A stretch of 64,000 nucleotides of DNA from Auanema rhodensis (taxonomy: Eukaryota > Animalia > Nematoda): assembly GCA_964057225.1 (NCBI GenBank), contig OZ059898.1, forward strand, positions 10,974,001 to 11,038,000, in the 5' to 3' direction. The position numbers and the translations under genes are program-made. Positions 250 to 59,231 of the stretch are shown here, one piece after another (position 1 is the first letter of the stretch; each line of letters opens with the position of its first letter). The notes under the pieces were generated by a model. It worked only from the letters and a program-made list of their open reading frames with translations. It was not told the origin of the DNA and made no database searches.

Positions 250-254
250 GTACC

Positions 255-24400: not shown

Positions 24401-27400
24401 ATTTCAAACAAGCGTCTTATAGTTTCAGCGGAAACTGAAGCTCACAACTGTTTTTGCCATGTCATTCTGATCTAGTGAACTGAGGCGCTGCGCCCGTTTG
24501 CAGTATTATCCGTATTGCTTTGAAAACCGAATCATCTTTCTAATTTCAAACAAGCGCCTTAAATGTTTGGCTCAAAATGAAGCTAATAACTGTTGTTATC
24601 ATGTCTTTCTGGCCGAGTGGTCTAAGGCGCTGCGTTCAGGTCGCAGTCCTCTCCGGAGGGCGCAGGTTCGAATCCTGCGGATGACAGTATCTTTTTAGAA
24701 ACCAAATCACTTTTTTAATTTCAAACAAGCGCCTTAAAGTTTCAGCGATAACTGAAGCTCACAACTGTTTTTGCCATGTCATTCTGAACTAGTGAACTGA
24801 GGCGCTGCGCCCGTTCGCAGTATTATCAGCATTGCTTTGAAAACCGAATCATTTTTCTAATTTCAAACCAGCGCCTTAAATGTTTGGCTCAAAATAAAGC
24901 TAATAACTGTAGTTATCATGTCATTCTGGCCGAGTGGTCTAAGGCGCTGCGTTCAGGTCGCAGTCCTCTCCGGAGGGCGCAGGTTCGAATCCTGCGGATG
25001 ACAGTATCTTTTTGGAAACCAAATCACTTTTTTAATTTCAAACCAGCGCCTTAAAGTTTTGGCGGAAACTGAAGCTCACAACTGTTTTTGCCATGTCATT
25101 CTGATCTAGTGAACTGAGGCGCTGCGCCCGTTTGCAGTATTATCCGTATTGCTTTGAAAACCGAATCATCTTTCTAATTTCAAACCAGCGCCTTAAATTT
25201 TTGGCTCAAAATAAAGCTAATAACTGTAGTTATCATGTCATTCTGGCCGAGTGGTCTAAGGCGCTGCGTTCAGGTCGCAGTCCTCTCCGGAGGGCGCAGG
25301 TTCGAATCCTGCGAATGACAGTATCTTTTTGGAAACCAAATCACTTTTTTAATTTCAAACCAGCGCCTTAAAGTTTTGGCGGAAACTGAAGCTCACAACT
25401 GTTTTTGCCGTGTCATTCTGAACTAGTGAACTGAGGCGCTGCGGCCAGTTCGCAGTATTATCAGTATTGCTTTGAAAACTGAATCATTTTTCTAATTTCA
25501 AACCAGCGCCTTCAATGTTTGGCTCAAAATAAAGCTAATAACTGTAGTTATCATGTCATTCTGGCCGAGTGGTCTAAGGCGCTGCGTTCAGGTCGCAGTC
25601 CTCTCCGGAGGGCGCAGGTTCGAATCCTGCGAATGACAGTATCTTTTTGGAAACCAAATCACTTTTTTAATTTCAAACCAGCGCCTTAAAGTTTTGGCGG
25701 AAACTGAAGCTCACAACTGTTTTTGCCGTGTCATTCTGAACTAGTGAACTGAGGCGCTGCGGCCAGTTCGCAGTATTATCAGTATTGCTTTGAAAACTGA
25801 ATCATTTTTCTAATTTCAAACCAGCGCCTTCAATGTTTGGCTCAAAATAAAGCTAATAACTGTAGTTATCATGTCATTCTGGCCGAGTGGTCTAAGGCGC
25901 TGCGTTCAGGTCGCAGTCCTCTCCGGAGGGCGCAGGTTCGAATCCTGCGAATGACAGTATCTTTTTGGAAACCAAATCACTTTTTTAATTTCAAACCAGC
26001 GCCTTAAAGTTTTGGCGGAAACTGAAGCTCACAACTGTTTTTGCCATGTCATTCTGAACTAGTGAACTGAGGCGCTGCGCCCGTTCGTAGTATTATCAGT
26101 ATTGTTTTGAAAACCGAATCATCTTTCTAATTTCAAACCAGCGCCTTGAATTTTTGGCTCAAAATAAAGCTAATAACTGTTGTTATCATGTCATTCTGGC
26201 CGAGTGGTCTAAGGCGCTGCGTTCAGGTCGCAGTCCTCTCCGGAGGGCGCAGGTTCGAATCCTGCGGATGACAGTATCTTTTTGGAAACCAAATCACTTT
26301 TTAATTTCAAACCAGCGCCTTAAAGTTTTGGCGGAAACTGAAGCTCACAACTGTTTTTGCCATGTCATTCTGATCTAGTGAACTGAGGCGCTGCGCCCGT
26401 TTGCAGTATTATCCGTATTGCTTTGAAAACCGAATCATCTTTCTAATTTCAAACCAGCGCCTTAAATTTTTGGCTCAAAATAAAGCTAATAACTGTAGTT
26501 ATCATGTCATTCTGGCCGAGTGGTCTAAGGCGCTGCGTTCAGGTCGCAGTCCTCTCCGGAGGGCGCAGGTTCGAATCCTGCGGATGACAGTATCTTTTTG
26601 GAAACCAATTCACTTTTTTAATTTCAAACAAGCGCCTTAAAGTTTCAGCGATAACTGAAGCTCACAACTGTTTTTGCCATGTCATTCTGAACTAGTGAAC
26701 TGAGGCGCTGCGCCCGTTCGCAGTATTATCAGTATTGCTTTGAAAACCGAATCATTTTTCTAATTTCAAACCAGCGCCTTAAATGTTTGGCTCAAAATAA
26801 AGCTAATAACTGTAGTTATCATGTCATTCTGGCCGAGTGGTCTAAGGCGCTGCGTTCAGGTCGCAGTCCTCTCCGGAGGGCGCAGGTTCGAATCCTGCGG
26901 ATGACAGTATCTTTTTGGAAACCAAATCACTTTTTTAATTTTAAACAAGCGTCTTAAAGTTTCAGCGGAAACTGAAGCTCACAACTGTTTTTGCCATGTC
27001 ATTCTGAACTAGTGAACTGAGGCGCTGCGGCCAGTTCGCAGTATTATCAGTATTGCTTTGAAAACTGAATCATTTTTCTAATTTCAAACCAGCGCCTTAA
27101 ATGTTTGGCTCAAAATAAAGCTAATAACTGTAGTTATCATGTCATTCTGGCCGAGTGGTCTAAGGCGCTGCGTTCAGGTCGCAGTCCTCTCCGGAGGGCG
27201 CAGGTTCGAATCCTGCGGATGACAGTATTTTTTTGGAAACCAAATCACTTTTTTAATTTCAAACAAGCGTCTTATAGTTTCAGCGGAAACTGAAGCTCAC
27301 AACTGTTTTTGCCATGTCATTCTGATCTAGTGAACTGAGGCGCTGTGCCCGTTTGCAGTATTATCCGTATTGCTTTGAAAACCGAATCATCTTTCTAATT

Positions 27401-29360
27401 TCAAACCAGCGCCTTAAATGTTTGGCTCAAAATGAAGCTAATAACTGTTGTTATCATGTCATTCTGGCCGAGTGGTCTAAGGCGCTGCGTTCAGGTCGCA
27501 GTCCTCTCCGGAGGGCGCAGGTTCGAATCCTGCGGATGACAGTATCTTTTTGGAAACCAAATCACTTTTTTAATTTCAAACCAGCGCCTTAAAGTTTTGG
27601 CGGAAACTGAAGCTCACAACTGTTTTTGCCATGTCATTCTGATCTAGTGAACTGAGGCGCTGCGCCCGTTTGCAGTATTATCCGTATTGCTTTGAAAACC
27701 GAATCATCTTTCTAATTTCAAACCAGCGCCTTAAATTTTTGGCTCAAAATAAAGCTAATAACTGTAGTTATCATGTCATTCTGGCCGAGTGGTCTAAGGC
27801 GCTGCGTTCAGGTCGCAGTCCTCTCCGGAGGGCGCAGGTTCGAATCCTGCGGATGACAGTATTTTTTTGGAAACCAAATCACTTTTTTAATTTCAAACCA
27901 GCGCCTTAAAGTTTCGGCGGAAACTGAAGCTCACAACTGTTTTTGCCGTGTCATTCTGAACTAGTGAACTGAGGCGCTGCGGCCAGTTCGCAGTATTATC
28001 AGTATTGCTTTGAAAACTGAATCATTTTTCTAATTTCAAACCAGCGCCTTCAATGTTTGGCTCAAAATGAAGCTAATAACTGTTGTTATCATGTCATTCT
28101 GGCCGAGTGGTCTAAGGCGCTGCGTTCAGGTCGCAGTCCTCTCCGGAGGGCGCAGGTTCGAATCCTGCGAATGACAGTATCTTTTTGGAAACCAAATCAC
28201 TTTTTTAATTTCAAACCAGCGCCTTAAAGTTTTGGCGGAAACTGAAGCTCACAACTGTTTTTGCCATGTCATTCTGAACTAGTGAACTGAGGCGCTGCGC
28301 CCGTTCGTAGTATTATCAGTATTGTTTTGAAAACCGAATCATCTTTCTAATTTCAAACCAGCGCCTTGAATTTTTGGCTCAAAATAAAGCTAATAACTGT
28401 TGTTATCATGTCATTCTGGCCGAGTGGTCTAAGGCGCTGCGTTCAGGTCGCAGTCCTCTCCGGAGGGCGCAGGTTCGAATCCTGCGGATGACAGTATCTT
28501 TTTGGAAACCAATTCACTTTTTTAATTTCAAACAAGCGCCTTAAAGTTTCAGCGATAACTGAAGCTCACAACTGTTTTTGCCATGTCATTCTGAACTAGT
28601 GAACTGAGGCGCTGCGCCCGTTCGCAGTATTATCAGTATTGCTTTGAAAACCGAATCATTTTTCTAATTTCAAACCAGCGCCTTAAATGTTTGGCTCAAA
28701 ATAAAGCTAATAACTGTAGTTATCATGTCATTCTGGCCGAGTGGTCTAAGGCGCTGCGTTCAGGTCGCAGTCCTCTCCGGAGGGCGCAGGTTCGAATCCT
28801 GCGGATGACAGTATCTTTTTGGAAACCAAATCACTTTTTTAATTTCAAACCAGCGCCTTAAAGTTTTGGCGGAAACTGAAGCTCACAACTGTTTTTGCCA
28901 TGTCATTCTGATCTAGTGAACTGAGGCGCTGCGCCCGTTTGCAGTATTATCCGTATTGCTTTGAAAACCGAATCATCTTTCTAATTTCAAACCAGCGCCT
29001 TAAATTTTTGGCTCAAAATAAAGCTAATAACTGTAGTTATCATGTCATTCTGGCCGAGTGGTCTAAGGCGCTGCGTTCAGGTCGCAGTCCTCTCCGGAGG
29101 GCGCAGGTTCGAATCCTGCGGATGACAGTATTTTTTTGGAAACCAAATCACTTTTTTAATTTCAAACAAGCGTCTTATAGTTTCAGCGGAAACTGAAGCT
29201 CACAACTGTTTTTGCCATGTCATTCTGATCTAGTGAACTGAGGCGCTGTGCCCGTTTGCAGTATTATCCGTATTGCTTTGAAAACCGAATCATCTTTCTA
29301 ATTTCAAACCAGCGCCTTAAATGTTTGGCTCAAAATGAAGCTAATAACTGTTGTTATCAT

Positions 29361-29444
29361 GTCATTCTGGCCGAGTGGTCTAAGGCGCTGCGTTCAGGTC
29401 GCAGTCCTCTCCGGAGGGCGCAGGTTCGAATCCTGCGGATGACA
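29361..29444 (+). tRNA. tRNA-Leu(CAG), last copy left of the retroelement
   Basis: Consensus 84-nt cloverleaf. Confidence 0.97.
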
Positions 29445-29669
29445 GTATCTTTTTGGAAACCAAATCACTTTTTTAATTTCAAACCAGCGCCTTAAAGTTT
29501 TGGCGGAAACTGAAGCTCACAACTGTTTTTGCCATGTCATTCTGATCTAGTGAACTGAGGCGCTGCGCCCGTTTGCAGTATTATCCGTATTGCTTTGAAA
29601 ACCGAATCATCTTTCTAATTTCAAACCAGCGCCTTAAATTTTTGGCTCAAAATAAAGCTAATAACTGTA

Positions 29670-29674
29670 GTTAT
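29670..29674. repeat. Target-site duplication GTTAT (left copy; right copy at 37430-37434)
   Basis: Empty unit reads CTGTA GTTAT CAT-tRNA. Filled site reads CTGTA GTTAT [element] GTTAT CAT-tRNA. Confidence 0.93.
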
Positions 29675-30090
29675 TTTTGAAGATAGAGGGCTCTTCAAAT
29701 AGCCTCCCAGGTTCACACTTTCTATTCTATGCCCTGTTAACGTAAAATACTATTAGAGGAAGAAAGATTCATTCATATGCCATTCAGATATACATAATAC
29801 AGAATATAAGGACTAGAAGATATATAATAAGACTAGATAAAATACATAGAAGACTAGAGTGAATGTAATAAGACTAGATATACATCACTAATGAGACTAG
29901 AGATAGTCTTACTAAAGGACAAGGATAAAACGGTGGTTCAGACTAGATGAGTCATAAGATAAAGACAGCAACGAGGAGAGAGAAAAGCGACCGTCCGCGA
30001 CGGTGGTATAAAAACAGAGTGCCCGTGAATCTCATCAGCCAACGTGATGAGATTGCATCGATTGAATGATGGATAATCGCATTCGCGATA
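29675..30090 (-). repeat. 3' LTR (416 bp)
   Basis: Reads TTTTGAAG...ATTCGCGATA on +. No difference from 37014-37429 seen by eye. Confidence 0.96.
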
Positions 30091-30100
30091 TTCCGGGCCA
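30091..30100 (-). promoter_or_regulatory. Putative plus-strand primer site (PPT position), TGGCCCGGAA abutting the 3' LTR
   Basis: Called by position. GC-rich ...CCGGAA resembles the atypical PPTs of nematode BEL elements. Confidence 0.55.
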
Positions 30101-30123
30101 GGAGAGAGAAATCAGAACTGATT

Positions 30124-30453
30124 TCATTCTGCTAGTTCCTCCGCAAACTGCAGCTTGCATAATACACCAGGATGATCGTGGTCCAGTCCGCTTCCTTTGC
30201 ACACATGACATATTTTCTTCATCTTCTCCACACACGGTTTTCCAAAGTGGTTCCGCAAACACTTCAAGCACATGTTGATCAACTTGCAACGCTTGACGCG
30301 TTGTGCTGCAGTCTTGTAGACTGTGCATTTTCCCATGGTGTGGCCCTTCTTCCAACAGAGTTGACATTTCATGTCTTCTTCCATTTTTCTGTACTTCACT
30401 TTAGAGTTGTTCTGCTTTTTTGGTGCAGACGTATTCTGACTTTTGTTAGGCAT
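30124..30453 (-). CDS. Basic nucleocapsid-like protein with three BEL-Gag-type zinc knuckles (possibly a spliced terminal exon starting at 30517)
   Basis: CQLCWKKGHTMGKC (CX2CX4HX4C), CLKCLRNHFGKPC, CHVCKGSGLDHDHPGVLC; Lys-rich. The frame stays open upstream through a strong ATTATTTCAG acceptor (AG ends at 30518). Confidence 0.82.
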   Translation of the reverse strand: MPNKSQNTSAPKKQNNSKVKYRKMEEDMKCQLCWKKGHTMGKCTVYKTAAQRVKRCKLINMCLKCLRNHFGKPCVEKMKKICHVCKGSGLDHDHPGVLCKLQFAEELAE

Positions 30454-30680
30454 CTTTGAGTTGCCGTTATCCTGGAGTTGATCAAGGGAATCGCTCCATT
30501 CTTTGATGTTATCAAGACTGAAATAATGATGGTTTTTATACGTAGTATACCTCCCCGCGGCAAAATGATAAATTGTGTAGGACTGGTGTAAATCAAATTG
30601 AACAATCGTTTGCTATGATAGGGAACTAAGAAATCGAGAAAATAAATCGAGGACTCACTGGGTATTGAACCCGTCATCAA

Positions 30681-33600
30681 TCACTGAGAGTGCGTACCCT
30701 TAGCCACTGCGCTATGACTGGCTCGAACTACAATCTTGAACAACAAATGAATTGTGAAAAAAATGATGCGAAAAGGAATTGCGCAGATAATAAGTATTTG
30801 TATGGGTAAATATGCTAGGAGAGCGGGTGTACTTGACAACTGGAAGACGCGGTCAATTACGGCGGTTACAAAGCCGAGTACTGTGATCAAAACACTCAAT
30901 AGTATTACAATCGTTTTAAGGTAGTCCGAGTAAAACGAAACAAGTGAGCTGATTAAGTGAGTGGGTACAAAAAAGCTCGGTATGGTAAACTCGACGTTCA
31001 GGAGACTGAATGAACTGTTTGTAATCTGATGAGTGGACTGTTCAAAACCTATGTATTCGTTCACGTAGTACAAGTTGCCTTTGAGATGTAATGTGGCGGA
31101 AGTACACGGATGAGTACACGTTATAGACGGTGTTGAAAAATTGCTCTGTATGGGAATAGAGTTGTTGTAACCCTGAGAATTGCATGTAAGCAGAAATTCT
31201 TCATCGTCGCACGAAATTCGAATGTGGGATGATGTACTGATGCAAGTAATGATTGTTGTTGCTCCAGTAACACAGTCAAAACATCCAACTAGGTCTTTGG
31301 ATTTTAGTTCGCAAATAGTAGGACTATTGTCGTATTCATAAGTGACATCTGAGATATTTGTCCACATTTTAATGTCAACAGCGCTTATGGGATGAGCAAA
31401 AATGAGATTGTTTTTTGGGATCATGGTCAGAGATGGAAGAGATAATGGTAGGGTGTAGTTATTAGTATAGAGCATGTTAGGATTGCTGTCCTGACAATAG
31501 CAATTTTCGACTGTTTCGGCTGGTCTGCATGAACATGTGTCTGTTACAGTACATTCGGAGAATGGGTCAGCGGTTTTAACTTTTCCGCACGAGTATGAAA
31601 ATGTAGCAGAGTGAGGTAAAACTGCAATTCTCGAGTTGGAAGTAATGAATCGTCTATGGAGGATTTCATTATCAGAATATGTTATTCTCCCAAGAGTAAT
31701 ATGGTACCCGTTAATGATTTTTGTAGAGTGTGGTAAAAAGGGGACGTGCGAGATCGTTTCAGTTTTGTTCTCAATAGCTGTATGGATGCTAATCTGGAGA
31801 AAAACCCTAGGTGTCCATCGTGAGCAGTAGAAAACTTCGTGGGTGATATTGTCATTGGGAACATGAAAGTTGCGATAGAAGAGACAACCAGAAGTTGGCA
31901 ACGCACAACCGCATGATAGAAATCCACAGCTTTCTGAACAATAGCTGGTACCTGGATATTGGTTGGCTAATGAGAGTTCTGAGATTGATGTATTGGGTCG
32001 AACGTTCGCACAAAACGATCCTACACAAGAGCCCATATGGGGACACCGTTTTGCGGATTCAGTTTTTACGATGGTGTGACGTGTAAAAAATAAGGATACT
32101 TTCGTGCACAGTATACGTGTATACATAAGTTTGATGCGCAGGTGTGAGTTCGTGAGGGGATTGGCGTATGATCGGTTTGAATGTGAAGTTGTGAAACATA
32201 CCTCATTATCGTAAGTATGGAGGGTGGTGGAGCTGCTGACTTGGTTGACTTGGTGGGTAGGTGATAAGTTCGAGACGGAGTTGCCTGGAACATGTGATAT
32301 ACTCGGAGGAACAATAGTACATGCATTAACTACAAGAGATTCAATCAAAAAAATGACGATTATTGCAACCAAAAGATACCCGACTCGGTGAACTAATCGG
32401 TCACGTTGTCGTGATCGTTGTGAGGGTGTAGACTTCTGCCATCGAGGTAGCTTGTGAGAACTGAGCGGGACGTACTCGAGTACCGATCGTTCTTCCTGAA
32501 TAGAGATATGAGATCTTATATGAGATGGGAGACATTGAGTGATCATACGCCAAACGGAAAAAAGGGTGTATTGTGCAATATGAACAAATTTTTTAGAACA
32601 AATTCGGATGACTATGATGCTTAAAAGAATGCTAAATAGAATGAGCCATATGATGAGTGCGGTCGCCGAGAGTGCTGCGTATGGGAAACAAGATGGGTTG
32701 TGGAGTAGTTCAAGACAGAACAGACATTGAATCATATCGCAAAACGGAGTTGCTGGACAATCCAGTTGATGCAATGCAAATGTGTCATTTTTATCGATAA
32801 TATGTCGTGAGATGAATGTGTGGTCATGCAATACAACATGAGCCGGAAATACTATGGTGAAGTTGGGAGTATTTGGGTTGTACTCTACACATGTTTCTCG
32901 GGCACAAACTCGGATGGGATGTCCAGTACCGCAGTTTGATATGCCTACTCCTCCTTTGATGCAAGAGAACTGGCAGATGTTGGTTGCGGACATTGTATTG
33001 ACGAGAATACCCAGTATCATGGCTATGAAAAAATGTGTGTAACTGGGGAGACGTTGTCGTTTTCGAGGTTGTGGTTCATTTTCACCTTCATCATCTGCAA
33101 TGGTGATCACTTCGATGTCATCATCATCGTTGATAGTGATAACGTTTGGGTCTATCACGTTTTCAGTTGTATTGGGTCCGGTCGATGTGCTGGTTTCCAC
33201 AACGGTGGATACTTCGTTATCGAGTAAAATGACCTCTGGAGTTTCTTTAAACGTGACAGTTTTGTCTGATTTGTGTGGGGACTGCGTATGACTGTTTTCC
33301 GTATGATGCTCGTTGTCGGAAGGAATTTCAAGGGGAATCAGGCGATTGATGGGTCTAATTAGTTTGTGTCCATCAGATGTACGGACTTCTGCAACTCTCA
33401 CAGATTCCGTGTTCTGTATGCTTGTTATTAAACCCATTTTCCACTGGTTTCGTTTCGTATTGTCATCTGACATTAGCACTACTGTGCCTACTTTTGGTGT
33501 AGCTGTGGAGAAATGTCCTTGCTTGTGATCCAACATGTGTGTTGCTCGAAGGGCGACGACATATTCATTATGCCATCGTTGCCAAATTTTGTCAAGTGTT

Positions 33601-34223
33601 TTCTGAATGTTGTTTAAATGTTTTTGTATTCCAGAAAAGAAACTCATCTCTAAATTTTTTCTGGAGTATTTCATTCTGTTCATGTCATTTTGCAATGTTG
33701 TTGAGTCATGTACTGTAGAGTCAAATGAACTCTGATAGTCATCGAGTTCATCTCGGCGAAGTTGGATAAGTTGAGTATATTCCTCAACTTCGCCTGTGTT
33801 CACAATGAGATCTCTCTCATCACAATAGTCCAAAATGCCCTTGATCAGTTTTGCAACTGTGGGCGGATGTTCTTCGCCAATGTCTTTGGTGACAAGTTGG
33901 TCGATTTCATGAGCTTTCATGGTCTTATGGGCTTGAGGGTGTTTGGCCAACATCCTTTTATAGCTACCTTGGTATAATTCCAACCAAGTTGCTGGGTAGT
34001 CCACATGGGTGCGTTCCTCGAGCACCACTCGATGTTCGTCTAACTGATCTCGTAGTGATCGGAAGACGTCCCCAACCGGGATGGCTTTATAATATATACG
34101 CATCAAGCTAGGCTTGTGCGTATGTATGAACTCTCGACATCTGTCAATGTCATCAACCGGGGGGAAGATGAATGCTTGATGGTACGGGAGGATGTCCTCC
34201 TTCACCGTGTTGAACAACTTCAA
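30681..34223 (-). CDS. env: Retroelement polyprotein: Gag-N-like helical region, BEL integrase C-terminal domain (DUF5641-like), linker, short Gn-like glycoprotein and phlebovirus-like class II fusion glycoprotein Gc
   Basis: aa ~212-300: IWQRWHNEYVVALR..PKVGTVVLM..RNQWKMGLI..VRVAEVRT..RPINRLIPLEI. Signal FFIAMILGILVNTMSA. Gn motif CPATPFCDMIQCLFCLELLHNPSC plus TM. Second signal ..LIESLVVNA|C at aa ~635. Gc motifs KRCPHMGSC and YPGTSYCSESCGFLSCGCALPTSGCLFYR. C-terminal TMs. 1180 codons without a stop; true start uncertain (see findings). Confidence 0.93.
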   Translation of the reverse strand: MKLFNTVKEDILPYHQAFIFPPVDDIDRCREFIHTHKPSLMRIYYKAIPVGDVFRSLRDQLDEHRVVLEERTHVDYPATWLELYQGSYKRMLAKHPQAHKTMKAHEIDQLVTKDIGEEHPPTVAKLIKGILDYCDERDLIVNTGEVEEYTQLIQLRRDELDDYQSSFDSTVHDSTTLQNDMNRMKYSRKNLEMSFFSGIQKHLNNIQKTLDKIWQRWHNEYVVALRATHMLDHKQGHFSTATPKVGTVVLMSDDNTKRNQWKMGLITSIQNTESVRVAEVRTSDGHKLIRPINRLIPLEIPSDNEHHTENSHTQSPHKSDKTVTFKETPEVILLDNEVSTVVETSTSTGPNTTENVIDPNVITINDDDDIEVITIADDEGENEPQPRKRQRLPSYTHFFIAMILGILVNTMSATNICQFSCIKGGVGISNCGTGHPIRVCARETCVEYNPNTPNFTIVFPAHVVLHDHTFISRHIIDKNDTFALHQLDCPATPFCDMIQCLFCLELLHNPSCFPYAALSATALIIWLILFSILLSIIVIRICSKKFVHIAQYTLFSVWRMITQCLPSHIRSHISIQEERSVLEYVPLSSHKLPRWQKSTPSQRSRQRDRLVHRVGYLLVAIIVIFLIESLVVNACTIVPPSISHVPGNSVSNLSPTHQVNQVSSSTTLHTYDNEVCFTTSHSNRSYANPLTNSHLRIKLMYTRILCTKVSLFFTRHTIVKTESAKRCPHMGSCVGSFCANVRPNTSISELSLANQYPGTSYCSESCGFLSCGCALPTSGCLFYRNFHVPNDNITHEVFYCSRWTPRVFLQISIHTAIENKTETISHVPFLPHSTKIINGYHITLGRITYSDNEILHRRFITSNSRIAVLPHSATFSYSCGKVKTADPFSECTVTDTCSCRPAETVENCYCQDSNPNMLYTNNYTLPLSLPSLTMIPKNNLIFAHPISAVDIKMWTNISDVTYEYDNSPTICELKSKDLVGCFDCVTGATTIITCISTSSHIRISCDDEEFLLTCNSQGYNNSIPIQSNFSTPSITCTHPCTSATLHLKGNLYYVNEYIGFEQSTHQITNSSFSLLNVEFTIPSFFVPTHLISSLVSFYSDYLKTIVILLSVLITVLGFVTAVIDRVFQLSSTPALLAYLPIQILIICAIPFRIIFFTIHLLFKIVVRASHSAVAKGTHSQ

Positions 34224-37001
34224 CGCGTGAGTTATATTTCTTTTTAAACAACTTAACTGTCTTGCTAAGGCAGTCAGGTTACGAGTTACGAGTTTCCGAT
34301 GGAGAAGAGGGACTCATAATCATTTTGTTTGAAGAGAAATATTATTGTTCAAGTTAATTTTGTGTTTAATCTAGCTAATTTGTGGATTGATTATTAAAAT
34401 CAATTGAATTAAAGTCCGAATATAATAGCTGTCGATAGAAGGAATAACAATATATAATATAAATAGGAATATAAATAAACAAGTAATATAAGCAAATAAG
34501 ATAAGCAAATAGTTCACTATTAGAAGGTACAATGAATATTTAGTTGAATATTTGTTAACAGTTTTTTCTTTGGAGAGTTATACTGTTAGTTTTTTCGTGT
34601 AGTTGTTACTGTTTCGTTAAATTACTTGTGTGGAATCTTTTGTAAAAAAATGTATGTTTTATCTTTTGAATATATTTTTTTTTTTTTTTGTTAGCTAAGT
34701 TAGTATATTTTTAATTTTTTTTTTTTTTTTTTTTAAAATGGAGATTGTTCAGGCAAAGATAATTCAATAAGTATCTTTCTCTGGTTAAAAAAGAAAAATT
34801 GGATGATTCACTAGATGAGAGAACAATTCAAGTTGAGAGATTACTGTAGGAAATAGAGAGAAAAAATTGAGTTTCCCAAAATCGATCAAAAAATGTGAGC
34901 AAACTAGCTTGGATGAATTCAGTAAAGTTTTCTGAGTAATTTGATACTAAATATGCTGTTGTTTTTTATCAAAAAATATAATATCAATATTAATATTAAT
35001 TGGTTGAAATATAATAAGGATATCCAAAAAATATTCAAAATATTATTGTTTGATTGATCAGAAAGTATGTGTATGAAAAGGATGAGTGATTTGAGACAAA
35101 AGATTTATTTCTGGACAGATGAACAAAGGAAATTGTATAAGATAACAGATGTGAATGAAATATAAACAATATAAAATGTGAAATAATAAAATTAAAATAA
35201 AACAAATTGAAATTATAAAATAACTTACCAACTTAATGTAAATGTATAATTGATACCAGAGAGTATCAATTCAAATTCAATAAGCGGTTAAAGTGTTAAT
35301 GCGAACAAATGAAAACTAACTTGATTCTCCTTGAGGATCCTTGATGTCGATTGTCCTTGTCTGGTGAATAGGTTAGCAGATGGCGTCGGGTGCTGTGGCT
35401 GGTTGTAGCGGCGGAATGAATGACCTGTCTGGCAGCTAGGCCGTGTGGGATGTTAAGAGGGAGGAGCTAATCTGCAAAAAGTATATGTAAGATTATTAAA
35501 TGAGATTATTTAATGCGTTTGAAACAAAACGAGTGGGTTAACTTCTCATAACATTTTAAAATGTTTTGATATTCCATGTCATTCGATGATGACCTAGATA
35601 ATGTGTGAGAGATGTTTGCGTGGTGCTAATGGCGCCGCACCAGGTCAATGAACAGATGGCAACATCTTTTGTCTTTTTTCGCGTATCTTGTCAACATATT
35701 TGCTAAAATCGACTTTTTGGTGCAAAATGTTGGAAATATCTCTTAACCTTTGCTGAGATTTATATTTTATGCTTTAACATGCGTAGGATGATAATTCGTA
35801 GCTCTTTCGTGTCTTATCATTATCTCATCTATGTAGGATGGGATATTATGATGTTTTGTGATTTTTCACAGAAATTTTCATCTGCGTAGGATTTTAACAA
35901 TATAGTTAATGTATTTTGTCCTATAGAACGTGGGTGATGATCTTATATAAGATAAAATATATAAATTTTATGAATTTCATGATTTGGACTCTGACCTTTC
36001 TCATTGACCCGTTGGTCGTTACATATGACTCATATGGTTGGAAACAATAGATTTACAGACAATGGATGAATAAAGAAATTTAAAAACTATAAAACAAGCC
36101 GTAAATAGTAAAAACTCGGAACTCTTTCGCATTTTTATATAAACAACACCTACCGAGAGTGCAAGGGTACCAAACAAACATCAACAAGTAGGTCAACAGA
36201 CGTTCCTTGTTGATAGGCTCCTTCCACACATGTTCACAAATAATCGTTGATCTCTAAGATACTGACTCCTTTACAGATGAGGAAACAGACAGCATTACTC
36301 ATATAGCAAGGAGACATTGGTCTAAGATGCCTTTTAGTCACCTATTCAATTGATTCACAATTGTTAAAATAACTTTTGCACTCGAAGTCTATCAAAACTG
36401 TTTGCAATGATTATTGAAAGTTACGTAAAATATAAAAGATATAAAAAGGTCTCAAAATCAAAGAATAAATGAATAAATAGCGTTTTTAGACGGTAGCTTT
36501 GCTAATGCGTAATTCATATCATTGTTTCTCACTGTCCTCAGTCAGTAAAAATAAGATCGCCATAAAATGTGTTTGTTGGTACTTTGTCTGCATTTTTCTC
36601 GTACTCTCGCATATTCTTCCTAGGAAAATACTGTGAAACATAATAAGGGGTGATCAATCCCAGCTGAGTCACTGCCGGCAAGTTAAAGGAAGTAGCCATT
36701 GGGTAATCCAATAGAGTTTATATAGCGAACAACCCACTATGTTACTTTCTGTAATCATGTGGTACAAAAATATGGTATCAACCAAAATTTTAAATAATGT
36801 TTAATTATCACTGATATCTAGACAATATTTAACAACCAATTATGTCATACTGACATACGATTCCTTTAGAGTATTTAGATCAGTGAACTTATACTGTAAA
36901 GGACATCCAACGAGTCACTATTAACGAGCAGACTGGCTTGAAGAAAAAAAAAGAAAAAAGATAAAGTAGCGCAATAGAAAGGTCATAGAGTAGAAAGTGA
37001 T

Positions 37002-37013
37002 GCCGATGCACCA
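37002..37013 (-). promoter_or_regulatory. Primer-binding site TGGTGCATCGGC, complementary to the 3' end of tRNA-Gly(GCC)
   Basis: Begins TGG directly after the 5' LTR. The + strand reads GCCGATGCA-CCA, matching the invertebrate tRNA-Gly(GCC) acceptor end (GCATCGG.../...CCGATGCA-CCA). Confidence 0.85.
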
Positions 37014-37429
37014 TTTTGAAGATAGAGGGCTCTTCAAATAGCCTCCCAGGTTCACACTTTCTATTCTATGCCCTGTTAACGTAAAATACTATTAGAGGAA
37101 GAAAGATTCATTCATATGCCATTCAGATATACATAATACAGAATATAAGGACTAGAAGATATATAATAAGACTAGATAAAATACATAGAAGACTAGAGTG
37201 AATGTAATAAGACTAGATATACATCACTAATGAGACTAGAGATAGTCTTACTAAAGGACAAGGATAAAACGGTGGTTCAGACTAGATGAGTCATAAGATA
37301 AAGACAGCAACGAGGAGAGAGAAAAGCGACCGTCCGCGACGGTGGTATAAAAACAGAGTGCCCGTGAATCTCATCAGCCAACGTGATGAGATTGCATCGA
37401 TTGAATGATGGATAATCGCATTCGCGATA
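37014..37429 (-). repeat. 5' LTR (416 bp)
   Basis: Direct repeat of 29675-30090; adjacent to the PBS. Confidence 0.96.
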
Positions 37430-37437
37430 GTTATCAT

Positions 37438-37521
37438 GTCATTCTGGCCGAGTGGTCTAAGGCGCTGCGTTCAGGTCGCAGTCCTCTCCGGAGGGCGCAG
37501 GTTCGAATCCTGCGGATGACA
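37438..37521 (+). tRNA. tRNA-Leu(CAG) immediately next to the retroelement 5' LTR
   Basis: Intact consensus. Only GTTATCAT (8 bp) of the native upstream flank remains. Confidence 0.96.
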
Positions 37522-40500
37522 GTATTTTTTTGGAAACCAAATCACTTTTTTAATTTCAAACCAGCGCCTTAAAGTTTCGGCGGAAACTGAAGCTCACAAC
37601 TGTTTTTGCCGTGTCATTCTGAACTAGTGAACTGAGGCGCTGCGGCCAGTTCGCAGTATTATCAGTATTGCTTTGAAAACTGAATCATTTTTCTAATTTC
37701 AAACCAGCGCCTTCAATGTTTGGCTCAAAATGAAGCTAATAACTGTTGTTATCATGTCATTCTGGCCGAGTGGTCTAAGGCGCTGCGTTCAGGTCGCAGT
37801 CCTCTCCGGAAGGCGCAGGTTCGAATCCTGCGAATGACAGTATCTTTTTGGAAACCAAATCACTTTTTTAATTTCAAACCAGCGCCTTAAAGTTTTGGCG
37901 GAAACTGAAGCTCACAACTGTTTTTGCCATGTCATTCTGAACTAGTGAACTGAGGCGCTGCGCCCGTTCGTAGTATTATCAGTATTGTTTTGAAAACCGA
38001 ATCATCTTTCTAATTTCAAACCAGCGCCTTGAATTTTTGGCTCAAAATAAAGCTAATAACTGTTGTTATCATGTCATTCTGGCCGAGTGGTCTAAGGCGC
38101 TGCGTTCAGGTCGCAGTCCTCTCCGGAGGGCGCAGGTTCGAATCCTGCGGATGACAGTATCTTTTTGGAAACCAAATCACTTTTTTAATTTCAAACCAGC
38201 GCCTTAAAGTTTTGGCGGAAACTGAAGCTCACAACTGTTTTTGCCATGTCATTCTGATCTAGTGAACTGAGGCGCTGCGCCCGTTTGCAGTATTATCCGT
38301 ATTGCTTTGAAAACCGAATCATCTTTCTAATTTCAAACCAGCGCCTTAAATTTTTGGCTCAAAATAAAGCTAATAACTGTAGTTATCATGTCATTCTGGC
38401 CGAGTGGTCTAAGGCGCTGCGTTCAGGTCGCAGTCCTCTCCGGAGGGCGCAGGTTCGAATCCTGCGGATGACAGTATCTTTTTGGAAACCAATTCACTTT
38501 TTTAATTTCAAACAAGCGCCTTAAAGTTTCAGCGGAAACTGAAGCTCACAACTGTTTTTGCCATGTCATTCTGAACTAGTGAACTGAGGCGCTGCGGCCA
38601 GTTCGCAGTATTATCAGTATTGCTTTGAAAACTGAATCATTTTTCTAATTTCAAACCAGCGCCTTGAATTTTTGGCTCAAAATATAGCTAATAACTGTTG
38701 TTATTATGTCATTCTGGCCGAGTGGTCTAAGGCGCTGCGTTCAGGTCGCAGTCCTCTCCGGAGGGCGCAGGTTCGAATCCTGCGGATGACAGTATCTTTT
38801 TGGAAACCAAATCACTTTTTTAATTTCAAACCAGCGCCTTAAAGTTTCGGCGGAAACTGAAGCTCAAAACTGTTTTTACCGTGTCATTCTGATCTAGTGA
38901 ACTGAGGCGCTGCGGCCAGTTCGCAGTATTATCAGTATTGCTTTGGAAACCGAATCATTTTTCTAATTTCAAACCAGCGCCTTAAATGTTTGGCTCAAAA
39001 TAATGCTAATAACTGTAGTTATCATGTCATTCTGGCCGAGTGGTCTAAGGCGCTGCGTTCAGGTCGCAGTCCTCTCCGGAGGGCGCAGGTTCCAATCCTG
39101 CGAATGACAGTATCTTTTTGGAAACCAAATCACTTTTTTAATTTCAAACCAGCGCCTTAAAGTTTTGGCGGAAAGTGAAGTTCACAACTGTTTTTGCCAT
39201 GTCATTCTGAACTAGTGAACTGAGGCGCTGCGCCCGTTTGCAGTATTATCAGTATTGCTTTGAAAACTGAATCATTTTCCTAATTTCAAACCAGCGCCTT
39301 AAATGTTTGGCTCAAAATAAAGCTAATAACTGTAGTTATCATGTCATTCTGGCCGAGTGGTCTAAGGCGCTGCGTTCAGGTCGCAGTCCTCTCCGGAGGG
39401 CGCAGGTTCGAATCCTGCGAATGACAGTATCTTTTTGGAAACCAAATCACTTTTTTAATTTCAAACCAGCGCCTTAAAGTTTTGGCGGAAAGTGAAGCTC
39501 ACAACTGTTTTTGCCATGTCATTCTGAACTAGTGAACTGAGGCGCTGCGCCCGTTCGCAGTATTATCAGTATTGCTTTGAAAACTGAATCATTTTCCTAA
39601 TTTCAAACCAGCGCCTTAAATGTTTGGCTCAAAATAAAGCTAATAACTGTAGTTATCATGTCATTCTGGCCGAGTGGTCTAAGGCGCTGCGTTCAGGTCG
39701 CAGTCCTCTCCGGAGGGCGCAGGTTCGAATCCTGCGGATGACAGTATCTTTTTGGAAACCAATTCACTTTTTTAATTTCAAACAAGCGCCTTAAAGTTTC
39801 AGCGATAACTGAAGCTCACAACTGTTTTTGCCATGTCATTCTGATCTAGTGAACTGAGGCGCTGCGGCCAGTTCGCAGTATTATCAGTATTGCTTTGAAA
39901 ACCGAATCATCTTTCTAATTTCAAACCAGCGCCTTAAATTTTTGGCTCAAAATAAAGCTAATAACTGTAGTTATCATGTCATTCTGGCCGAGTGGTCTAA
40001 GGCGCTGCGTTCAGGTCGCAGTCCTCTCCGGAGGGCGCAGGTTCGAATCCTGCGGATGACAGTATTTTTTTGGAAACCAAATCACTTTTTTAATTTCAAA
40101 CAAGCGTCTTATAGTTTCAGCGGAAACTGAAGCTCACAACTGTTTTTGCCATGTCATTCTGATCTAGTGAACTGAGGCGCTGTGCCCGTTTGCAGTATTA
40201 TCCGTATTGCTTTGAAAACCGAATCATCTTTCTAATTTCAAACCAGCGCCTTAAATGTTTGGCTCAAAATGAAGCTAATAACTGTTGTTATCATGTCATT
40301 CTGGCCGAGTGGTCTAAGGCGCTGCGTTCAGGTCGCAGTCCTCTCCGGAGGGCGCAGGTTCGAATCCTGCGGATGACAGTATCTTTTTGGAAACCAAATC
40401 ACTTTTTTAATTTCAAACCAGCGCCTTAAAGTTTTGGCGGAAACTGAAGCTCACAACTGTTTTTGCCATGTCATTCTGATCTAGTGAACTGAGGCGCTGC

Positions 40501-43500
40501 GCCCGTTTGCAGTATTATCCGTATTGCTTTGAAAACCGAATCATCTTTCTAATTTCAAACCAGCGCCTTAAATTTTTGGCTCAAAATAAAGCTAATAACT
40601 GTAGTTATCATGTCATTCTGGCCGAGTGGTCTAAGGCGCTGCGTTCAGGTCGCAGTCCTCTCCGGAGGGCGCAGGTTCGAATCCTGCGGATGACAGTATT
40701 TTTTTGGAAACCAAATCACTTTTTTAATTTCAAACCAGCGCCTTAAAGTTTCGGCGGAAACTGAAGCTCACAACTGTTTTTGCCGTGTCATTCTGAACTA
40801 GTGAACTGAGGCGCTGCGGCCAGTTCGCAGTATTATCAGTATTGCTTTGAAAACTGAATCATTTTTCTAATTTCAAACCAGCGCCTTCAATGTTTGGCTC
40901 AAAATGAAGCTAATAACTGTTGTTATCATGTCATTCTGGCCGAGTGGTCTAAGGCGCTGCGTTCAGGTCGCAGTCCTCTCCGGAGGGCGCAGGTTCGAAT
41001 CCTGCGAATGACAGTATCTTTTTGGAAACCAAATCACTTTTTTAATTTCAAACCAGCGCCTTAAAGTTTTGGCGGAAACTGAAGCTCACAACTGTTTTTG
41101 CCATGTCATTCTGAACTAGTGAACTGAGGCGCTGCGCCCGTTCGTAGTATTATCAGTATTGTTTTGAAAACCGAATCATCTTTCTAATTTCAAACCAGCG
41201 CCTTGAATTTTTGGCTCAAAATAAAGCTAATAACTGTTGTTATCATGTCATTCTGGCCGAGTGGTCTAAGGCGCTGCGTTCAGGTCGCAGTCCTCTCCGG
41301 AGGGCGCAGGTTCGAATCCTGCGGATGACAGTATCTTTTTGGAAACCAATTCACTTTTTTAATTTCAAACAAGCGCCTTAAAGTTTCAGCGATAACTGAA
41401 GCTCACAACTGTTTTTGCCATGTCATTCTGAACTAGTGAACTGAGGCGCTGCGCCCGTTCGCAGTATTATCAGTATTGCTTTGAAAACCGAATCATTTTT
41501 CTAATTTCAAACCAGCGCCTTAAATGTTTGGCTCAAAATAAAGCTAATAACTGTAGTTATCATGTCATTCTGGCCGAGTGGTCTAAGGCGCTGCGTTCAG
41601 GTCGCAGTCCTCTCCGGAGGGCGCAGGTTCGAATCCTGCGGATGACAGTATCTTTTTGGAAACCAAATCACTTTTTTAATTTCAAACCAGCGCCTTAAAG
41701 TTTTGGCGGAAACTGAAGCTCACAACTGTTTTTGCCATGTCATTCTGATCTAGTGAACTGAGGCGCTGCGCCCGTTTGCAGTATTATCCGTATTGCTTTG
41801 AAAACCGAATCATCTTTCTAATTTCAAACCAGCGCCTTAAATTTTTGGCTCAAAATAAAGCTAATAACTGTAGTTATCATGTCATTCTGGCCGAGTGGTC
41901 TAAGGCGCTGCGTTCAGGTCGCAGTCCTCTCCGGAGGGCGCAGGTTCGAATCCTGCGGATGACAGTATTTTTTTGGAAACCAAATCACTTTTTTAATTTC
42001 AAACAAGCGTCTTATAGTTTCAGCGGAAACTGAAGCTCACAACTGTTTTTGCCATGTCATTCTGATCTAGTGAACTGAGGCGCTGTGCCCGTTTGCAGTA
42101 TTATCCGTATTGCTTTGAAAACCGAATCATCTTTCTAATTTCAAACCAGCGCCTTAAATGTTTGGCTCAAAATGAAGCTAATAACTGTTGTTATCATGTC
42201 ATTCTGGCCGAGTGGTCTAAGGCGCTGCGTTCAGGTCGCAGTCCTCTCCGGAGGGCGCAGGTTCGAATCCTGCGGATGACAGTATCTTTTTGGAAACCAA
42301 ATCACTTTTTTAATTTCAAACCAGCGCCTTAAAGTTTTGGCGGAAACTGAAGCTCACAACTGTTTTTGCCATGTCATTCTGATCTAGTGAACTGAGGCGC
42401 TGCGCCCGTTTGCAGTATTATCCGTATTGCTTTGAAAACCGAATCATCTTTCTAATTTCAAACCAGCGCCTTAAATTTTTGGCTCAAAATAAAGCTAATA
42501 ACTGTAGTTATCATGTCATTCTGGCCGAGTGGTCTAAGGCGCTGCGTTCAGGTCGCAGTCCTCTCCGGAGGGCGCAGGTTCGAATCCTGCGGATGACAGT
42601 ATTTTTTTGGAAACCAAATCACTTTTTTAATTTCAAACCAGCGCCTTAAAGTTTCGGCGGAAACTGAAGCTCACAACTGTTTTTGCCGTGTCATTCTGAA
42701 CTAGTGAACTGAGGCGCTGCGGCCAGTTCGCAGTATTATCAGTATTGCTTTGAAAACTGAATCATTTTTCTAATTTCAAACCAGCGCCTTCAATGTTTGG
42801 CTCAAAATGAAGCTAATAACTGTTGTTATCATGTCATTCTGGCCGAGTGGTCTAAGGCGCTGCGTTCAGGTCGCAGTCCTCTCCGGAAGGCGCAGGTTCG
42901 AATCCTGCGAATGACAGTATCTTTTTGGAAACCAAATCACTTTTTTAATTTCAAACCAGCGCCTTAAAGTTTTGGCGGAAACTGAAGCTCACAACTGTTT
43001 TTGCCATGTCATTCTGAACTAGTGAACTGAGGCGCTGCGCCCGTTCGTAGTATTATCAGTATTGTTTTGAAAACCGAATCATCTTTCTAATTTCAAACCA
43101 GCGCCTTGAATTTTTGGCTCAAAATAAAGCTAATAACTGTTGTTATCATGTCATTCTGGCCGAGTGGTCTAAGGCGCTGCGTTCAGGTCGCAGTCCTCTC
43201 CGGAGGGCGCAGGTTCGAATCCTGCGGATGACAGTATCTTTTTGGAAACCAAATCACTTTTTTAATTTCAAACCAGCGCCTTAAAGTTTTGGCGGAAACT
43301 GAAGCTCACAACTGTTTTTGCCATGTCATTCTGATCTAGTGAACTGAGGCGCTGCGCCCGTTTGCAGTATTATCCGTATTGCTTTGAAAACCGAATCATC
43401 TTTCTAATTTCAAACCAGCGCCTTAAATTTTTGGCTCAAAATAAAGCTAATAACTGTAGTTATCATGTCATTCTGGCCGAGTGGTCTAAGGCGCTGCGTT

Positions 43501-46500: not shown

Positions 46501-47422
46501 GTTCAGGTCGCAGTCCTCTCCGGAGGGCGCAGGTTCGAATCCTGCGGATGACAGTATCTTTTTGGAAACCAAATCACTTTTTTAATTTCAAACCAGCGCC
46601 TTAAAGTTTCGGCGGAAACTGAAGCTCACAACTGTTTTTGCCATGTCATTCTGATCTAGTGAACTGAGGCGCTGCGGCCAGTTCGCAGTATTATCAGTAT
46701 TGCTTTGGAAACCGAATCATTTTTCTAATTTCAAACCAGCGCCTTAAATTTTTGGCTCAAAATATAGCTAATAACTGTTGTTATCATGTCATTCTGGCCG
46801 AGTGGTCTAAGGCGCTGCGTTCAGGTCGCAGTCCTCTCCGGAGGGCGCAGGTTCGAATCCTGCGGATGACAGTATCTTTTTGGAAACCGAATCACTTTTT
46901 TAATTTCAAACCAGCGCCTTAAAGTTTTGGCGGAAACTGAAGCTCACAACTGTGTTTGCCATGTCATTCTGATCTAGTGAACTGAGGCGCTGCGCCCGTT
47001 CGCAGTATTATCAGTATTGCTTTGAAAACCGAATCATTTTTCTAATTTCAAACCAGCGCCTTAAACTTTTGGCTCAAAATGAAGCTAATAACTGTTGTTA
47101 TCATGTCATTCTGGCCGAGTGGTCTAAGGCGCTGCGTTCAGGTCGCAGTCCTCTCCGGAGGGCGCAGGTTCGAATCCTGCGGATGACAGTATCTTTTTGG
47201 AAACCAAATCACTTTTTTAATTTCAAACCAGCGCCTTAAAGTTTCAGCGATAACTGAAGCTCACAACTGTTTTTGCTATGTCATTCTGATCTAGTGAACT
47301 GAGGCGCTGCGGCCAGTTCGCAGTATTATCAGTATTGCTTTGAAAACCGAATCATTTTTCTAATTTCAAACCAGCGCCTTAAATGTTTGGCTCAAAATAA
47401 AGCTAGTAACTGTTGTTATCAT

Positions 47423-47506
47423 GTCATTCTGGCCGAGTGGTCTAAGGCGCTGCGTTCAGGTCGCAGTCCTCTCCGGAGGGCGCAGGTTCGAATCCTGCGG
47501 ATGACA
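47423..47506 (+). tRNA. tRNA-Leu(CAG), terminal copy of the array
   Basis: Consensus 84-nt cloverleaf. Confidence 0.97.

Positions 47507-59189: not shown

Positions 59190-59193
<4 letters not shown>

Positions 59194-59227: not shown

Positions 59228-59231
<4 letters not shown>

What the first reader, a model, noticed from the sequence alone, without database searches (positions are those of the whole stretch)
29675..37429. Freshly transposed 'envelope-only' Belpaovirus: pol absent, Gn/Gc ORF open; candidate satellite partner of a two-component endogenous virus
Seen: LTRs identical by eye, a perfect TSD and an intact PBS, yet no protease/RT/RNaseH/IN-core motifs and no ORF >=60 aa in 34224-37013. 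A ~200-aa N-terminal region runs in frame directly into the integrase C-terminal domain and then ~770 stop-free codons of glycoprotein. Known: nematode BEL elements (Cer13, Atlas) carry phlebovirus-like class II fusogens at the end of a gag-pol-env polyprotein, and non-autonomous derivatives usually let env decay. Inference: this copy was mobilised in trans, and a clean in-frame pol deletion with env preserved suggests a family that supplies envelope and nucleocapsid-like protein while borrowing RT/IN from a helper.
Basis: partly seen in the sequence, partly recalled or inferred. Interest (0 to 1): 0.9.

Follow-up and report, generated by a model that had tools for sequence, protein, structure and literature searches.

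The report
Pol-less env-carrying nematode-type retroelement copy
A recently inserted, internally scrambled copy of an Atlas/Cer13-type endogenous retrovirus-like element that has lost all its replication enzymes but still carries an unbroken phlebovirus-type envelope gene and a small nucleocapsid-like gene, so it must have been copied by enzymes from another element; whether it is a one-off or a dependent "partner" family cannot be told from this window.

Summary
On the minus strand lies a 7,755-bp LTR element (29675-37429) with two identical 416-nt LTRs, an exact 5-bp target duplication, a TGG-initiated PBS-like site, no protease/RT/RNase H/integrase-core signal anywhere, and one 1,211-codon open frame. 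That frame holds an orphan N-terminal region, the BEL/Pao integrase C-terminal domain (DUF5641) and a complete Gn-Gc envelope. Its Gc is closest to the Atlas virus Gc structure and keeps every highly conserved column, including 22 of 22 cysteines.

This is not a clean in-frame pol deletion. A 2.7-kb AT-rich non-coding spacer with no homolog sits where gag-pol should be. The N-terminal region matches neither Gag nor integrase of 152 relatives. There is no polypurine tract, and the LTR ends are not TG...CA.

The best reading is a mosaic, non-autonomous derivative copied in trans, a known kind (ETn/MusD, bovine ERVK D-type, RecKoRV), here retaining env and NC. No sibling or helper could be examined, so the satellite-partner idea stays untested. 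The element sits 4-8 nt upstream of a tRNA-Leu gene in a >47-kb tRNA-Leu array.

The parts
29675..37429 (-). Whole LTR element, 7,755 bp
   Evidence: Identical LTR pair, TSD and preserved phase of the host repeat
37014..37429 (-). 5' LTR (416 nt). It contains a 20-nt unit repeated about 3.6 times.
29675..30090 (-). 3' LTR (416 nt), identical to the 5' LTR
   Evidence: 0 mismatches
29670..29674 (.). Target-site duplication, left copy (GTTAT)
37430..37434 (.). Target-site duplication, right copy. It occupies -8 to -4 of the adjacent tRNA-Leu gene.
36997..37013 (-). PBS-like site starting TGG, directly after the 5' LTR. The cognate tRNA was not identified.
34314..36996 (-). AT-rich non-coding spacer (31% GC). 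It has no pol or gag remnant and no repeat elsewhere in the window. It contains A21 and A16 runs and one GC-rich exon-like island.
30681..34313 (-). Long open frame: 1,211 codons stop-to-stop plus the stop codon. The first in-frame ATG is at 34103, giving 1,140 aa. No stop or frameshift.
33615..34313 (-). Orphan N-terminal region of the long frame. It is predicted all-helical and has coding-like codon-position bias, but no homolog was found.
33330..33614 (-). The only remnant of pol: integrase C-terminal domain (DUF5641, ORF aa 204-298)
   Evidence: E 1.1e-14; 88 relatives match it
32574..33032 (-). Gn-like part of env (ORF aa about 398-550): signal-like hydrophobic segment, short ectodomain and a TM segment
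   Evidence: Pfam Phlebovirus_G1 E 1.1e-3, below the cut-off; PDB Gn chains E 3.8e-5; hydropathy
30684..32402 (-). Gc part of env (ORF aa about 608-1180): signal-like segment, class II fusion ectodomain and two C-terminal hydrophobic segments
   Evidence: Pfam PF07245 3e-64; PDB 7a4a 5.2e-33; AF2 plus Foldseek; 32/32 conserved columns kept; hydropathy
30127..30612 (-). The only remnant of gag: a nucleocapsid-like open frame (162 codons; the ATG-initiated ORF 30453-30127 is 109 aa) with three zinc knuckles, lying downstream of env in another frame
   Evidence: tblastn to the gag NC region of 11 relatives, best E 1.3e-6, all in one frame; BLASTP E 7e-10 to P0075 residues 382-467; knuckle counts; translation
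37438..37521 (+). tRNA-Leu(CAG) gene next to the element
   Evidence: Rfam 53.9 bits; ARAGORN
1..47631 (+). Host tandem array of 317/318-bp units with 125 tRNA-Leu(CAG) genes, interrupted only by the element

Best explanation
This is a mosaic, non-autonomous derivative of an Atlas/Cer13-type BEL/Pao element (Belpaoviridae with a phlebovirus-type Gn-Gc envelope). It was inserted recently, 4-8 nt upstream of one tRNA-Leu(CAG) gene in a large tRNA-Leu array.

Shown:
- Intact identical LTRs, a TSD and a PBS-like site.
- Complete absence of protease, RT, RNase H, the integrase zinc finger and core, and the capsid part of Gag.
- An unrelated 2.7-kb AT-rich non-coding spacer after the PBS.
- One long open frame joining an orphan helical region to the integrase C-terminal domain and a complete, conserved Gn-Gc.
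- A separate open frame for a three-zinc-knuckle nucleocapsid placed after env.

Inferred:
- Because it encodes no RT or integrase, its RNA was reverse-transcribed and integrated by proteins from another element of the host, as for other defective LTR elements.
- The mosaic arose before or during that copying, by non-homologous template switching or recombination, rather than in place.
- The env and NC frames are open either because the rearrangements are young or because they are kept by selection. This window cannot tell which.
For: - LTR identity 416/416, an exact TSD and preserved phase of the 317-bp host repeat show one insertion of the whole 7,755 bp.
- No pol or gag-CA signal: Pfam on all sense-strand pieces of the spacer; tblastn of 152 relatives gave a best E of 0.26 in the spacer.
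- Relatives are 2,500-3,900-aa Gag-Pol-Env polyproteins with the order DUF1759, NC, RT, Peptidase_A17, IN, DUF5641, Gn, Gc.
- In 22 short relatives the residues just upstream of DUF5641 all match pol of long relatives (E 1e-6 to 1e-109). The window's N-terminal region matches nothing.
- The spacer has 31% GC against 42% in the coding parts.
- The NC-like frame matches the gag NC of relatives and has three knuckles.
- Gc is intact: Pfam 3e-64, 7a4a 5e-33, Foldseek 5e-28, and 32/32 conserved columns including 22/22 Cys.
- Precedent for defective elements with a swapped central segment that dominate new insertions: PMC10924933.
Against: - No polypurine tract precedes the 3' LTR, and the LTR ends are TA...AA instead of TG...CA. 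This is unexpected for an element just processed by a retroviral-type integrase, unless these ends are normal for its family, which was not testable here.
- No sibling copy, solo LTR or helper is in the window.
- No protein above about 33% identity exists in the two protein libraries, so trans-copying rests on inference alone.
- Gene conversion between LTRs could make the insertion look younger than it is.
Confidence: 0.7

Rival explanations
1. One reading: a maintained family of pol-less elements whose env (and NC) products are made and used. It would be a dependent partner of an autonomous helper, that is, a two-component endogenous virus.
For: - Env is unbroken over 1,211 codons and keeps all highly conserved Gc columns.
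- The NC frame is open, starts with ATG and keeps three knuckles.
- The only TTTCAG on the sense strand of the 6.9-kb interior lies 64 nt upstream of the NC ATG.
- The orphan N-terminal region is open well beyond chance (P about 1e-6) and has coding-like codon bias.
- The insertion is recent.
Against: - Only a single copy was seen, so no copy number, helper or selection estimate is available.
- The env frame lacks a start at its 5' edge and follows a 2,910-nt leader with 36 ATGs.
- The capsid part of Gag is missing.
- A young rearrangement explains the open frames equally well.
Confidence: 0.12
2. A full-length element inserted here, and its interior was later rebuilt in place by deletions and insertions within the recombination-prone array.
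For: - The site lies in a highly repetitive array.
- The interior shows several junctions between unrelated segments.
Against: - Several independent events, including gain of 2.7 kb of foreign DNA and relocation of NC, would have had to occur while the LTRs collected no difference in 832 nt.
- None of the inserted material resembles the array or the flank.
Confidence: 0.1
3. Assembly artefact: a chimeric join of reads from different elements inside a hard-to-assemble array.
For: The window is dominated by a near-identical tandem repeat.
Against: The exact TSD, the exact repeat phase across the insertion and LTRs that end precisely at the host sequence are not what a mis-join produces.
Confidence: 0.04
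4. A host-domesticated envelope gene that merely retains old LTRs.
For: The glycoprotein frame is open and conserved.
Against: Identical LTRs and a fresh TSD inside a tRNA gene array indicate a young insertion, not an old fixed gene. No orthologous protein above about 33% identity was found.
Confidence: 0.03

Closest known systems
Atlas virus (Ancylostoma ceylanicum) and C. elegans Cer13: Belpaoviridae (BEL/Pao) elements with a phlebovirus-like Gn-Gc Env (PMC9094657; preprint 10.64898/2026.03.22.711591)
   Same: - The Gc is closest to the solved Atlas Gc structure, by sequence (7a4a, E 5e-33) and by fold.
- It has the DUF5641 integrase C-terminal domain directly upstream of Env.
- It has a nucleocapsid with three zinc knuckles, which the preprint calls a belpaovirus hallmark.
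- It has identical LTRs, as Atlas does.
   Different: - Atlas encodes one 2,828-aa Gag-Pol-Env polyprotein with almost no non-coding interior.
- Here MA/CA, PR, RT, RNase H and the integrase zinc finger and core are absent.
- NC lies after env, and a 2.7-kb non-coding spacer and an orphan coding region are present.
- Identity to any relative is only about 25-33%.
Defective LTR elements copied by autonomous partners: ETn/MusD (mouse), bovine ERVK[2-1-LTR] D-type/C-type, RecKoRV/KoRV-A (PMC10924933)
   Same: - LTRs and PBS are kept.
- The enzyme-coding centre is replaced by unrelated, mostly non-coding sequence.
- The insertion is recent despite having no RT or integrase of its own.
   Different: - Those elements are described as lacking functional genes. 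This copy keeps a complete envelope frame and an NC frame.
- Here the swapped segment is at the 5' side, and a gag piece has moved behind env.
- A partner and sibling copies have not been seen.
Phenuivirus Gn-Gc glycoproteins (class II fusion proteins; RVFV, SFTSV and Heartland virus Gc structures)
   Same: It shares the PF07245 domain, the conserved cysteine pattern and a predicted three-domain beta-rich fold. Named hits were returned for the window's own protein.
   Different: - Identity is 16-18% over the fold.
- The Gn part is short and matches only the C-terminal third of Gn.
- It is encoded by a DNA-integrated LTR element, in frame with an integrase domain.
Pol III-gene-targeting retroelements (yeast Ty3, Dictyostelium DGLT-A/TRE). 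This is recalled from general knowledge and is a lead only.
   Same: The insertion lies a few nucleotides upstream of a tRNA gene.
   Different: This is one insertion in a window that is three-quarters tRNA array, so a chance hit is plausible (about 3-6%). No such targeting is known to me for BEL/Pao.

Membership tests
BEL/Pao (Belpaoviridae) LTR element, Atlas/Cer13-type | Direct LTRs flanked by a short target-site duplication | tested here: met
   416-nt LTRs with 0 mismatches; 5-bp TSD; host repeat phase preserved
BEL/Pao (Belpaoviridae) LTR element, Atlas/Cer13-type | tRNA primer-binding site next to the 5' LTR | tested here: inconclusive
   A TGG-initiated site abuts the LTR. No tool-derived host tRNA other than the array's tRNA-Leu was available, and that one matches over only 5 nt.
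BEL/Pao (Belpaoviridae) LTR element, Atlas/Cer13-type | Polypurine tract next to the 3' LTR and TG...CA LTR termini | tested here: not met
   6 purines in the last 15 nt; the only purine run of 6 or more is about 45 nt away; termini read TA...AA
BEL/Pao (Belpaoviridae) LTR element, Atlas/Cer13-type | Pol with protease, RT, RNase H and integrase core (DUF1758, Peptidase_A17, RVT_1, Integrase_H2C2, rve) | tested here: not met
   No Pfam hit and no tblastn hit from 152 relatives outside the long ORF and the NC frame. It is therefore a derivative, not an autonomous member.
BEL/Pao (Belpaoviridae) LTR element, Atlas/Cer13-type | Integrase C-terminal domain DUF5641 | tested here: met
   PF18701 E 1.1e-14, 54.9 bits against a cut-off of 23.1
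BEL/Pao (Belpaoviridae) LTR element, Atlas/Cer13-type | Gag with capsid (DUF1759) and a three-zinc-knuckle nucleocapsid | tested here: inconclusive
   NC is present with 3 knuckles and homology to relatives' NC, but it is displaced behind env. DUF1759/capsid was not found.
BEL/Pao (Belpaoviridae) LTR element, Atlas/Cer13-type | Single Gag-Pol-Env polyprotein | tested here: not met
   The ORF holds only an orphan region, DUF5641 and Env; NC is in another frame
Class II viral fusion glycoprotein (phenuivirus Gc type) | Sequence membership in PF07245 | tested here: met
   217.5 bits against a cut-off of 22.9
Class II viral fusion glycoprotein (phenuivirus Gc type) | Beta-rich three-domain fold matching solved Gc structures | tested here: met
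   AF2 model pLDDT 77.9. Foldseek: 7a4a 5e-28, RVFV Gc 8e-23, TM about 0.5. The high rmsd is expected from differences in domain arrangement.
Class II viral fusion glycoprotein (phenuivirus Gc type) | Conserved disulphide cysteines | tested here: met
   22/22 Cys columns conserved in at least 90% of 107 relatives are kept
Class II viral fusion glycoprotein (phenuivirus Gc type) | Companion Gn | tested here: inconclusive
   PF07243 17.9 bits, below the cut-off of 25; PDB Gn chains E 3.8e-5 over about 120 residues
Class II viral fusion glycoprotein (phenuivirus Gc type) | Membrane fusion activity | not testable with these tools
   No functional data
Non-autonomous LTR elements copied in trans (ETn, ERVK D-type, RecKoRV kind) | LTRs and PBS kept, enzymes lost, centre replaced by unrelated sequence | tested here: met
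Non-autonomous LTR elements copied in trans (ETn, ERVK D-type, RecKoRV kind) | Several copies with the same architecture and different insertion sites | not tested
   No host assembly could be searched. Fetching related proviral DNA was left out (see referred steps).
Non-autonomous LTR elements copied in trans (ETn, ERVK D-type, RecKoRV kind) | An autonomous partner with matching LTR ends and PBS | not tested
   None in the window. The protein libraries hold nothing closer than about 33% identity.
Pol III-gene-targeting retroelements | Insertions consistently a few nt upstream of tRNA genes | tested here: inconclusive
   One insertion, with its TSD at -8 to -4 of a tRNA-Leu gene. The consistency of this across copies was not testable.

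The most novel reading that the evidence does not exclude
A lineage of pol-less belpaovirus derivatives is kept by selection because it supplies an envelope (Gn-Gc) and a nucleocapsid while depending on another element's RT and integrase. It may be expressed through nematode-style splicing of the downstream NC frame, and it may have a preference for inserting just upstream of tRNA genes.
Probability: 0.1. Interest if true: 0.8.

Novelty: new variant of a known kind. Interest (0 to 1): 0.5.

Why it matters
Defective LTR elements that ride on autonomous partners are well known, but they normally lose their genes. If env and NC retention in a pol-less copy proved to be a family trait under selection, it would be a division of labour between endogenous virus-like elements, in the only animal group known to pair a retroelement with a phlebovirus-type fusion protein. 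Even as a one-off, the copy has three uses:
- It documents very recent activity of an Atlas/Cer13-type family.
- It gives a natural example of non-homologous rearrangement in such elements.
- It marks a possible tRNA-gene-proximal insertion.

Tried and rejected
- **Homologs of the orphan N-terminal region:**
  - BLASTP and phmmer against 152 relatives gave a best E of 0.28.
  - A profile of the 350 residues upstream of DUF5641 in 45 relatives gave no hit.
  - Two word-index searches, with the region alone and within the ORF, found nothing.
  - Pfam gave only a sub-threshold coiled-coil-type hit, and the PDB sequence search found nothing.
  - Blind spot: the exhaustive search lists only the best 150 proteins, all of them env hits, so weaker matches to the N-terminal region alone would not be shown.
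- **AF2 model of the N-terminal region:** pLDDT was 42.7, so it was not used for a fold search.
- **tRNA-like sequence at the 3' end of env:** it looked tRNA-like by eye, but neither ARAGORN nor Rfam at E up to 10 supported this. Rejected.
- **PBS against the array's tRNA-Leu:** complementary over only 5 nt.
- **Rfam over the element:** only the flanking tRNAs were found.
- **Spacer and LTR against the rest of the window:** no copy and no solo LTR.
- **Right flank 47.6-64 kb:** no Pfam hit in 10 ORFs, only GA/CT microsatellites, so no clue to the host.
- **Literature:** nothing on tRNA-Leu arrays in nematodes. The BEL/Pao survey gave no data on LTR termini or PPT.
- **Spliced model:** not built. 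The exon-like island at 35329-35470 was searched alone. No tool predicts an intron there, so the joined step was left out.
Full report
**Anatomy**

- The window is dominated by a tandem array of 317/318-bp units (1-47631). It holds 125 predicted tRNA-Leu(CAG) genes, 85 of them identical.
- A 7,755-bp insertion at 29675-37429 interrupts the array.
  - Its ends are two 416-nt direct repeats with no mismatch, and identity stops exactly at both edges.
  - They are flanked by a 5-bp duplication, GTTAT.
  - The array spacing across the insertion is 8077 = 317 + 7755 + 5, so the whole segment arrived in one event.
- All coding potential is on the minus strand, and the site next to the high-coordinate LTR starts with TGG. 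The element is therefore minus-oriented, with its 5' LTR at 37014-37429.

**Interior, read 5' to 3' on the minus strand**

1. *Spacer.* After the PBS-like site comes a 2.7-kb spacer of 31% GC; the coding parts have 42%.
   - Its longest stop-free frame is 70 codons.
   - None of the 30 sense-strand pieces of at least 30 aa hits Pfam below E 0.05.
   - tblastn with 152 relatives gives nothing better than E 0.26.
   - It has no copy elsewhere in the window.
   - It therefore looks like foreign non-coding sequence rather than decayed gag-pol.
2. *Long open frame.* It runs 1,211 codons, 34313-30684.
   - The first 233 codons are an orphan region. No stop occurs there (chance about 1e-6), the other two frames hold 11 and 17 stops, and GC1 > GC2 as in coding sequence.
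   - No homolog of this region was found by any route.
   - Its AF2 model is all-helical but unreliable, with pLDDT 42.7.
   - The frame has no ATG until codon 71, and that ATG follows a 2,910-nt leader with 36 ATGs.
   - Next comes DUF5641, the BEL/Pao integrase C-terminal domain.
   - In 22 shorter relatives the residues just upstream of this domain all match pol of full-length relatives (E 1e-6 to 1e-109), whereas the window's do not. So the orphan region is not integrase.
   - After an acidic linker come a signal-like segment, a short Gn-like part, a TM segment, a second signal-like segment, Gc and two C-terminal hydrophobic segments.
3. *NC-like frame.* After the env stop, in another frame, lies a 162-codon open frame with an ATG-initiated 109-aa ORF.
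   - It aligns with the nucleocapsid part of Gag in 11 relatives, all in one frame, with a best tblastn E of 1.3e-6 and BLASTP E 7e-10 to P0075.
   - It has three zinc knuckles. The Atlas-clade preprint gives this number as a belpaovirus hallmark.
4. *Before the 3' LTR.* The last 36 nt hold no polypurine tract. A 12-nt pyrimidine run there also occurs inside each LTR.

**State of the genes (counts only)**

- gag: the matrix/capsid part is not detectable (one loss), and the nucleocapsid part is present, open and displaced (one relocation).
- pol: one large loss removes everything but the C-terminal integrase domain.
- env: no stop, no frameshift, no detectable loss.

**Family**

- The exhaustive protein search returned 2,714 relatives, 202 of them below 1e-30. 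Many are 2,500-3,900-aa polyproteins.
- Four of these were scanned and have the order DUF1759, NC, RT, Peptidase_A17, integrase, DUF5641, Gn, Gc.
- The only named close hit is from the nematode Oesophagostomum dentatum.
- The best solved-structure match, by sequence and by fold, is the Gc of Atlas virus from the hookworm Ancylostoma ceylanicum. Gc of RVFV, SFTSV and Heartland virus follow.
- Gc keeps 32 of 32 columns that are at least 90% conserved among 107 relatives, including 22 of 22 cysteines.
- No relative exceeds about 33% identity. The libraries therefore say nothing about siblings in the host genome.
- The host itself is unidentified. A nematode is inferred from the relatives only.

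**Mechanism**

- Shown: the copy has the cis parts of an LTR element and no enzyme genes.
- Inferred: it was copied by RT and integrase from another element, as for ETn/MusD, bovine ERVK D-type and RecKoRV, which also carry a swapped central segment (PMC10924933).
- The several junctions between unrelated segments fit non-homologous template switching or recombination before or during the copying.
- With 0 differences in 832 LTR positions, and per-site rates of about 1e-9 to 1e-8 per generation (my general knowledge of nematode estimates), the insertion is at most some 1e5-1e6 generations old. This assumes no LTR gene conversion.
- What does not fit easily is the missing PPT and the TA...AA termini.

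The satellite-partner reading is not excluded, and finding an NC frame makes it slightly more attractive. It still rests on one copy. A young rearrangement explains the open frames just as well, and the long ATG-rich leader argues against simple translation of env. I give it about 0.1.

- I also did not look up cluster members.
- The profile HMM and the alignments were used for scores and counts only.

- While reasoning about the PBS I spelled out from memory the 3' end of a nematode tRNA-Gly gene. When eyeing the env 3' end I recalled generic tRNA arm motifs. I stopped, used none of it, and report the tRNA identity as untested.
- In my reasoning I also worked out the approximate place of the pol junction. 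The report gives only gene and domain bounds.
- Short generic motifs (CCA tail, TTTCAG, TG/CA, a CCHC pattern) were typed from general knowledge in scripts 42, 68 and 72.
- One call failed on a frame slip of mine and was corrected.

Noticed in passing
window 1-47631: A tandem array of 317/318-bp units longer than 47 kb carries 125 predicted tRNA-Leu(CAG) genes, 85 of them identical. Each unit also holds a truncated tRNA-like half-copy (142/143-bp sub-period). The array runs off the left edge, and variant units lie at about 44.5-47.6 kb.
   Followed up: partly
window 37430-37521: The element's target duplication occupies -8 to -4 of a tRNA-Leu gene. This recalls Pol III-gene-targeting retroelements, but it is a single case, and chance is about 3-6% given the array.
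   Followed up: partly
window 30518-30523 (minus strand): The only TTTCAG on the sense strand of the 6.9-kb interior (2.1 expected) lies 64 nt upstream of the ATG of the NC-like ORF. It is a possible splice or trans-splice acceptor.
   Followed up: no
window 35329-35470 (minus strand): A GC-rich (51%) exon-like island with splice-like flanks sits inside the AT-rich spacer. Its open frames have no Pfam hit.
   Followed up: partly
window about 34680-34740 (minus strand): Runs of 21 and 16 A in the element's sense orientation lie near the 3' end of the spacer. This is compatible with capture of a polyadenylated RNA, but no upstream polyadenylation signal was recognised.
   Followed up: no
window 30100-30111, 29974-29985 and 37313-37324 (minus strand): The same 12-nt pyrimidine run occurs just upstream of the 3' LTR and once inside each LTR. 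It may be a microhomology left by a rearrangement.
   Followed up: no
window 29806-29879 and 37145-37218: Each LTR holds about 3.6 tandem copies of a 20-nt unit.
   Followed up: no
window 47650-64000: The flank has 31% GC, long GA/CT microsatellites (for example 52.7, 57.1, 59.2 and 61.9 kb) and no recognisable gene in ORFs of at least 80 aa.
   Followed up: partly
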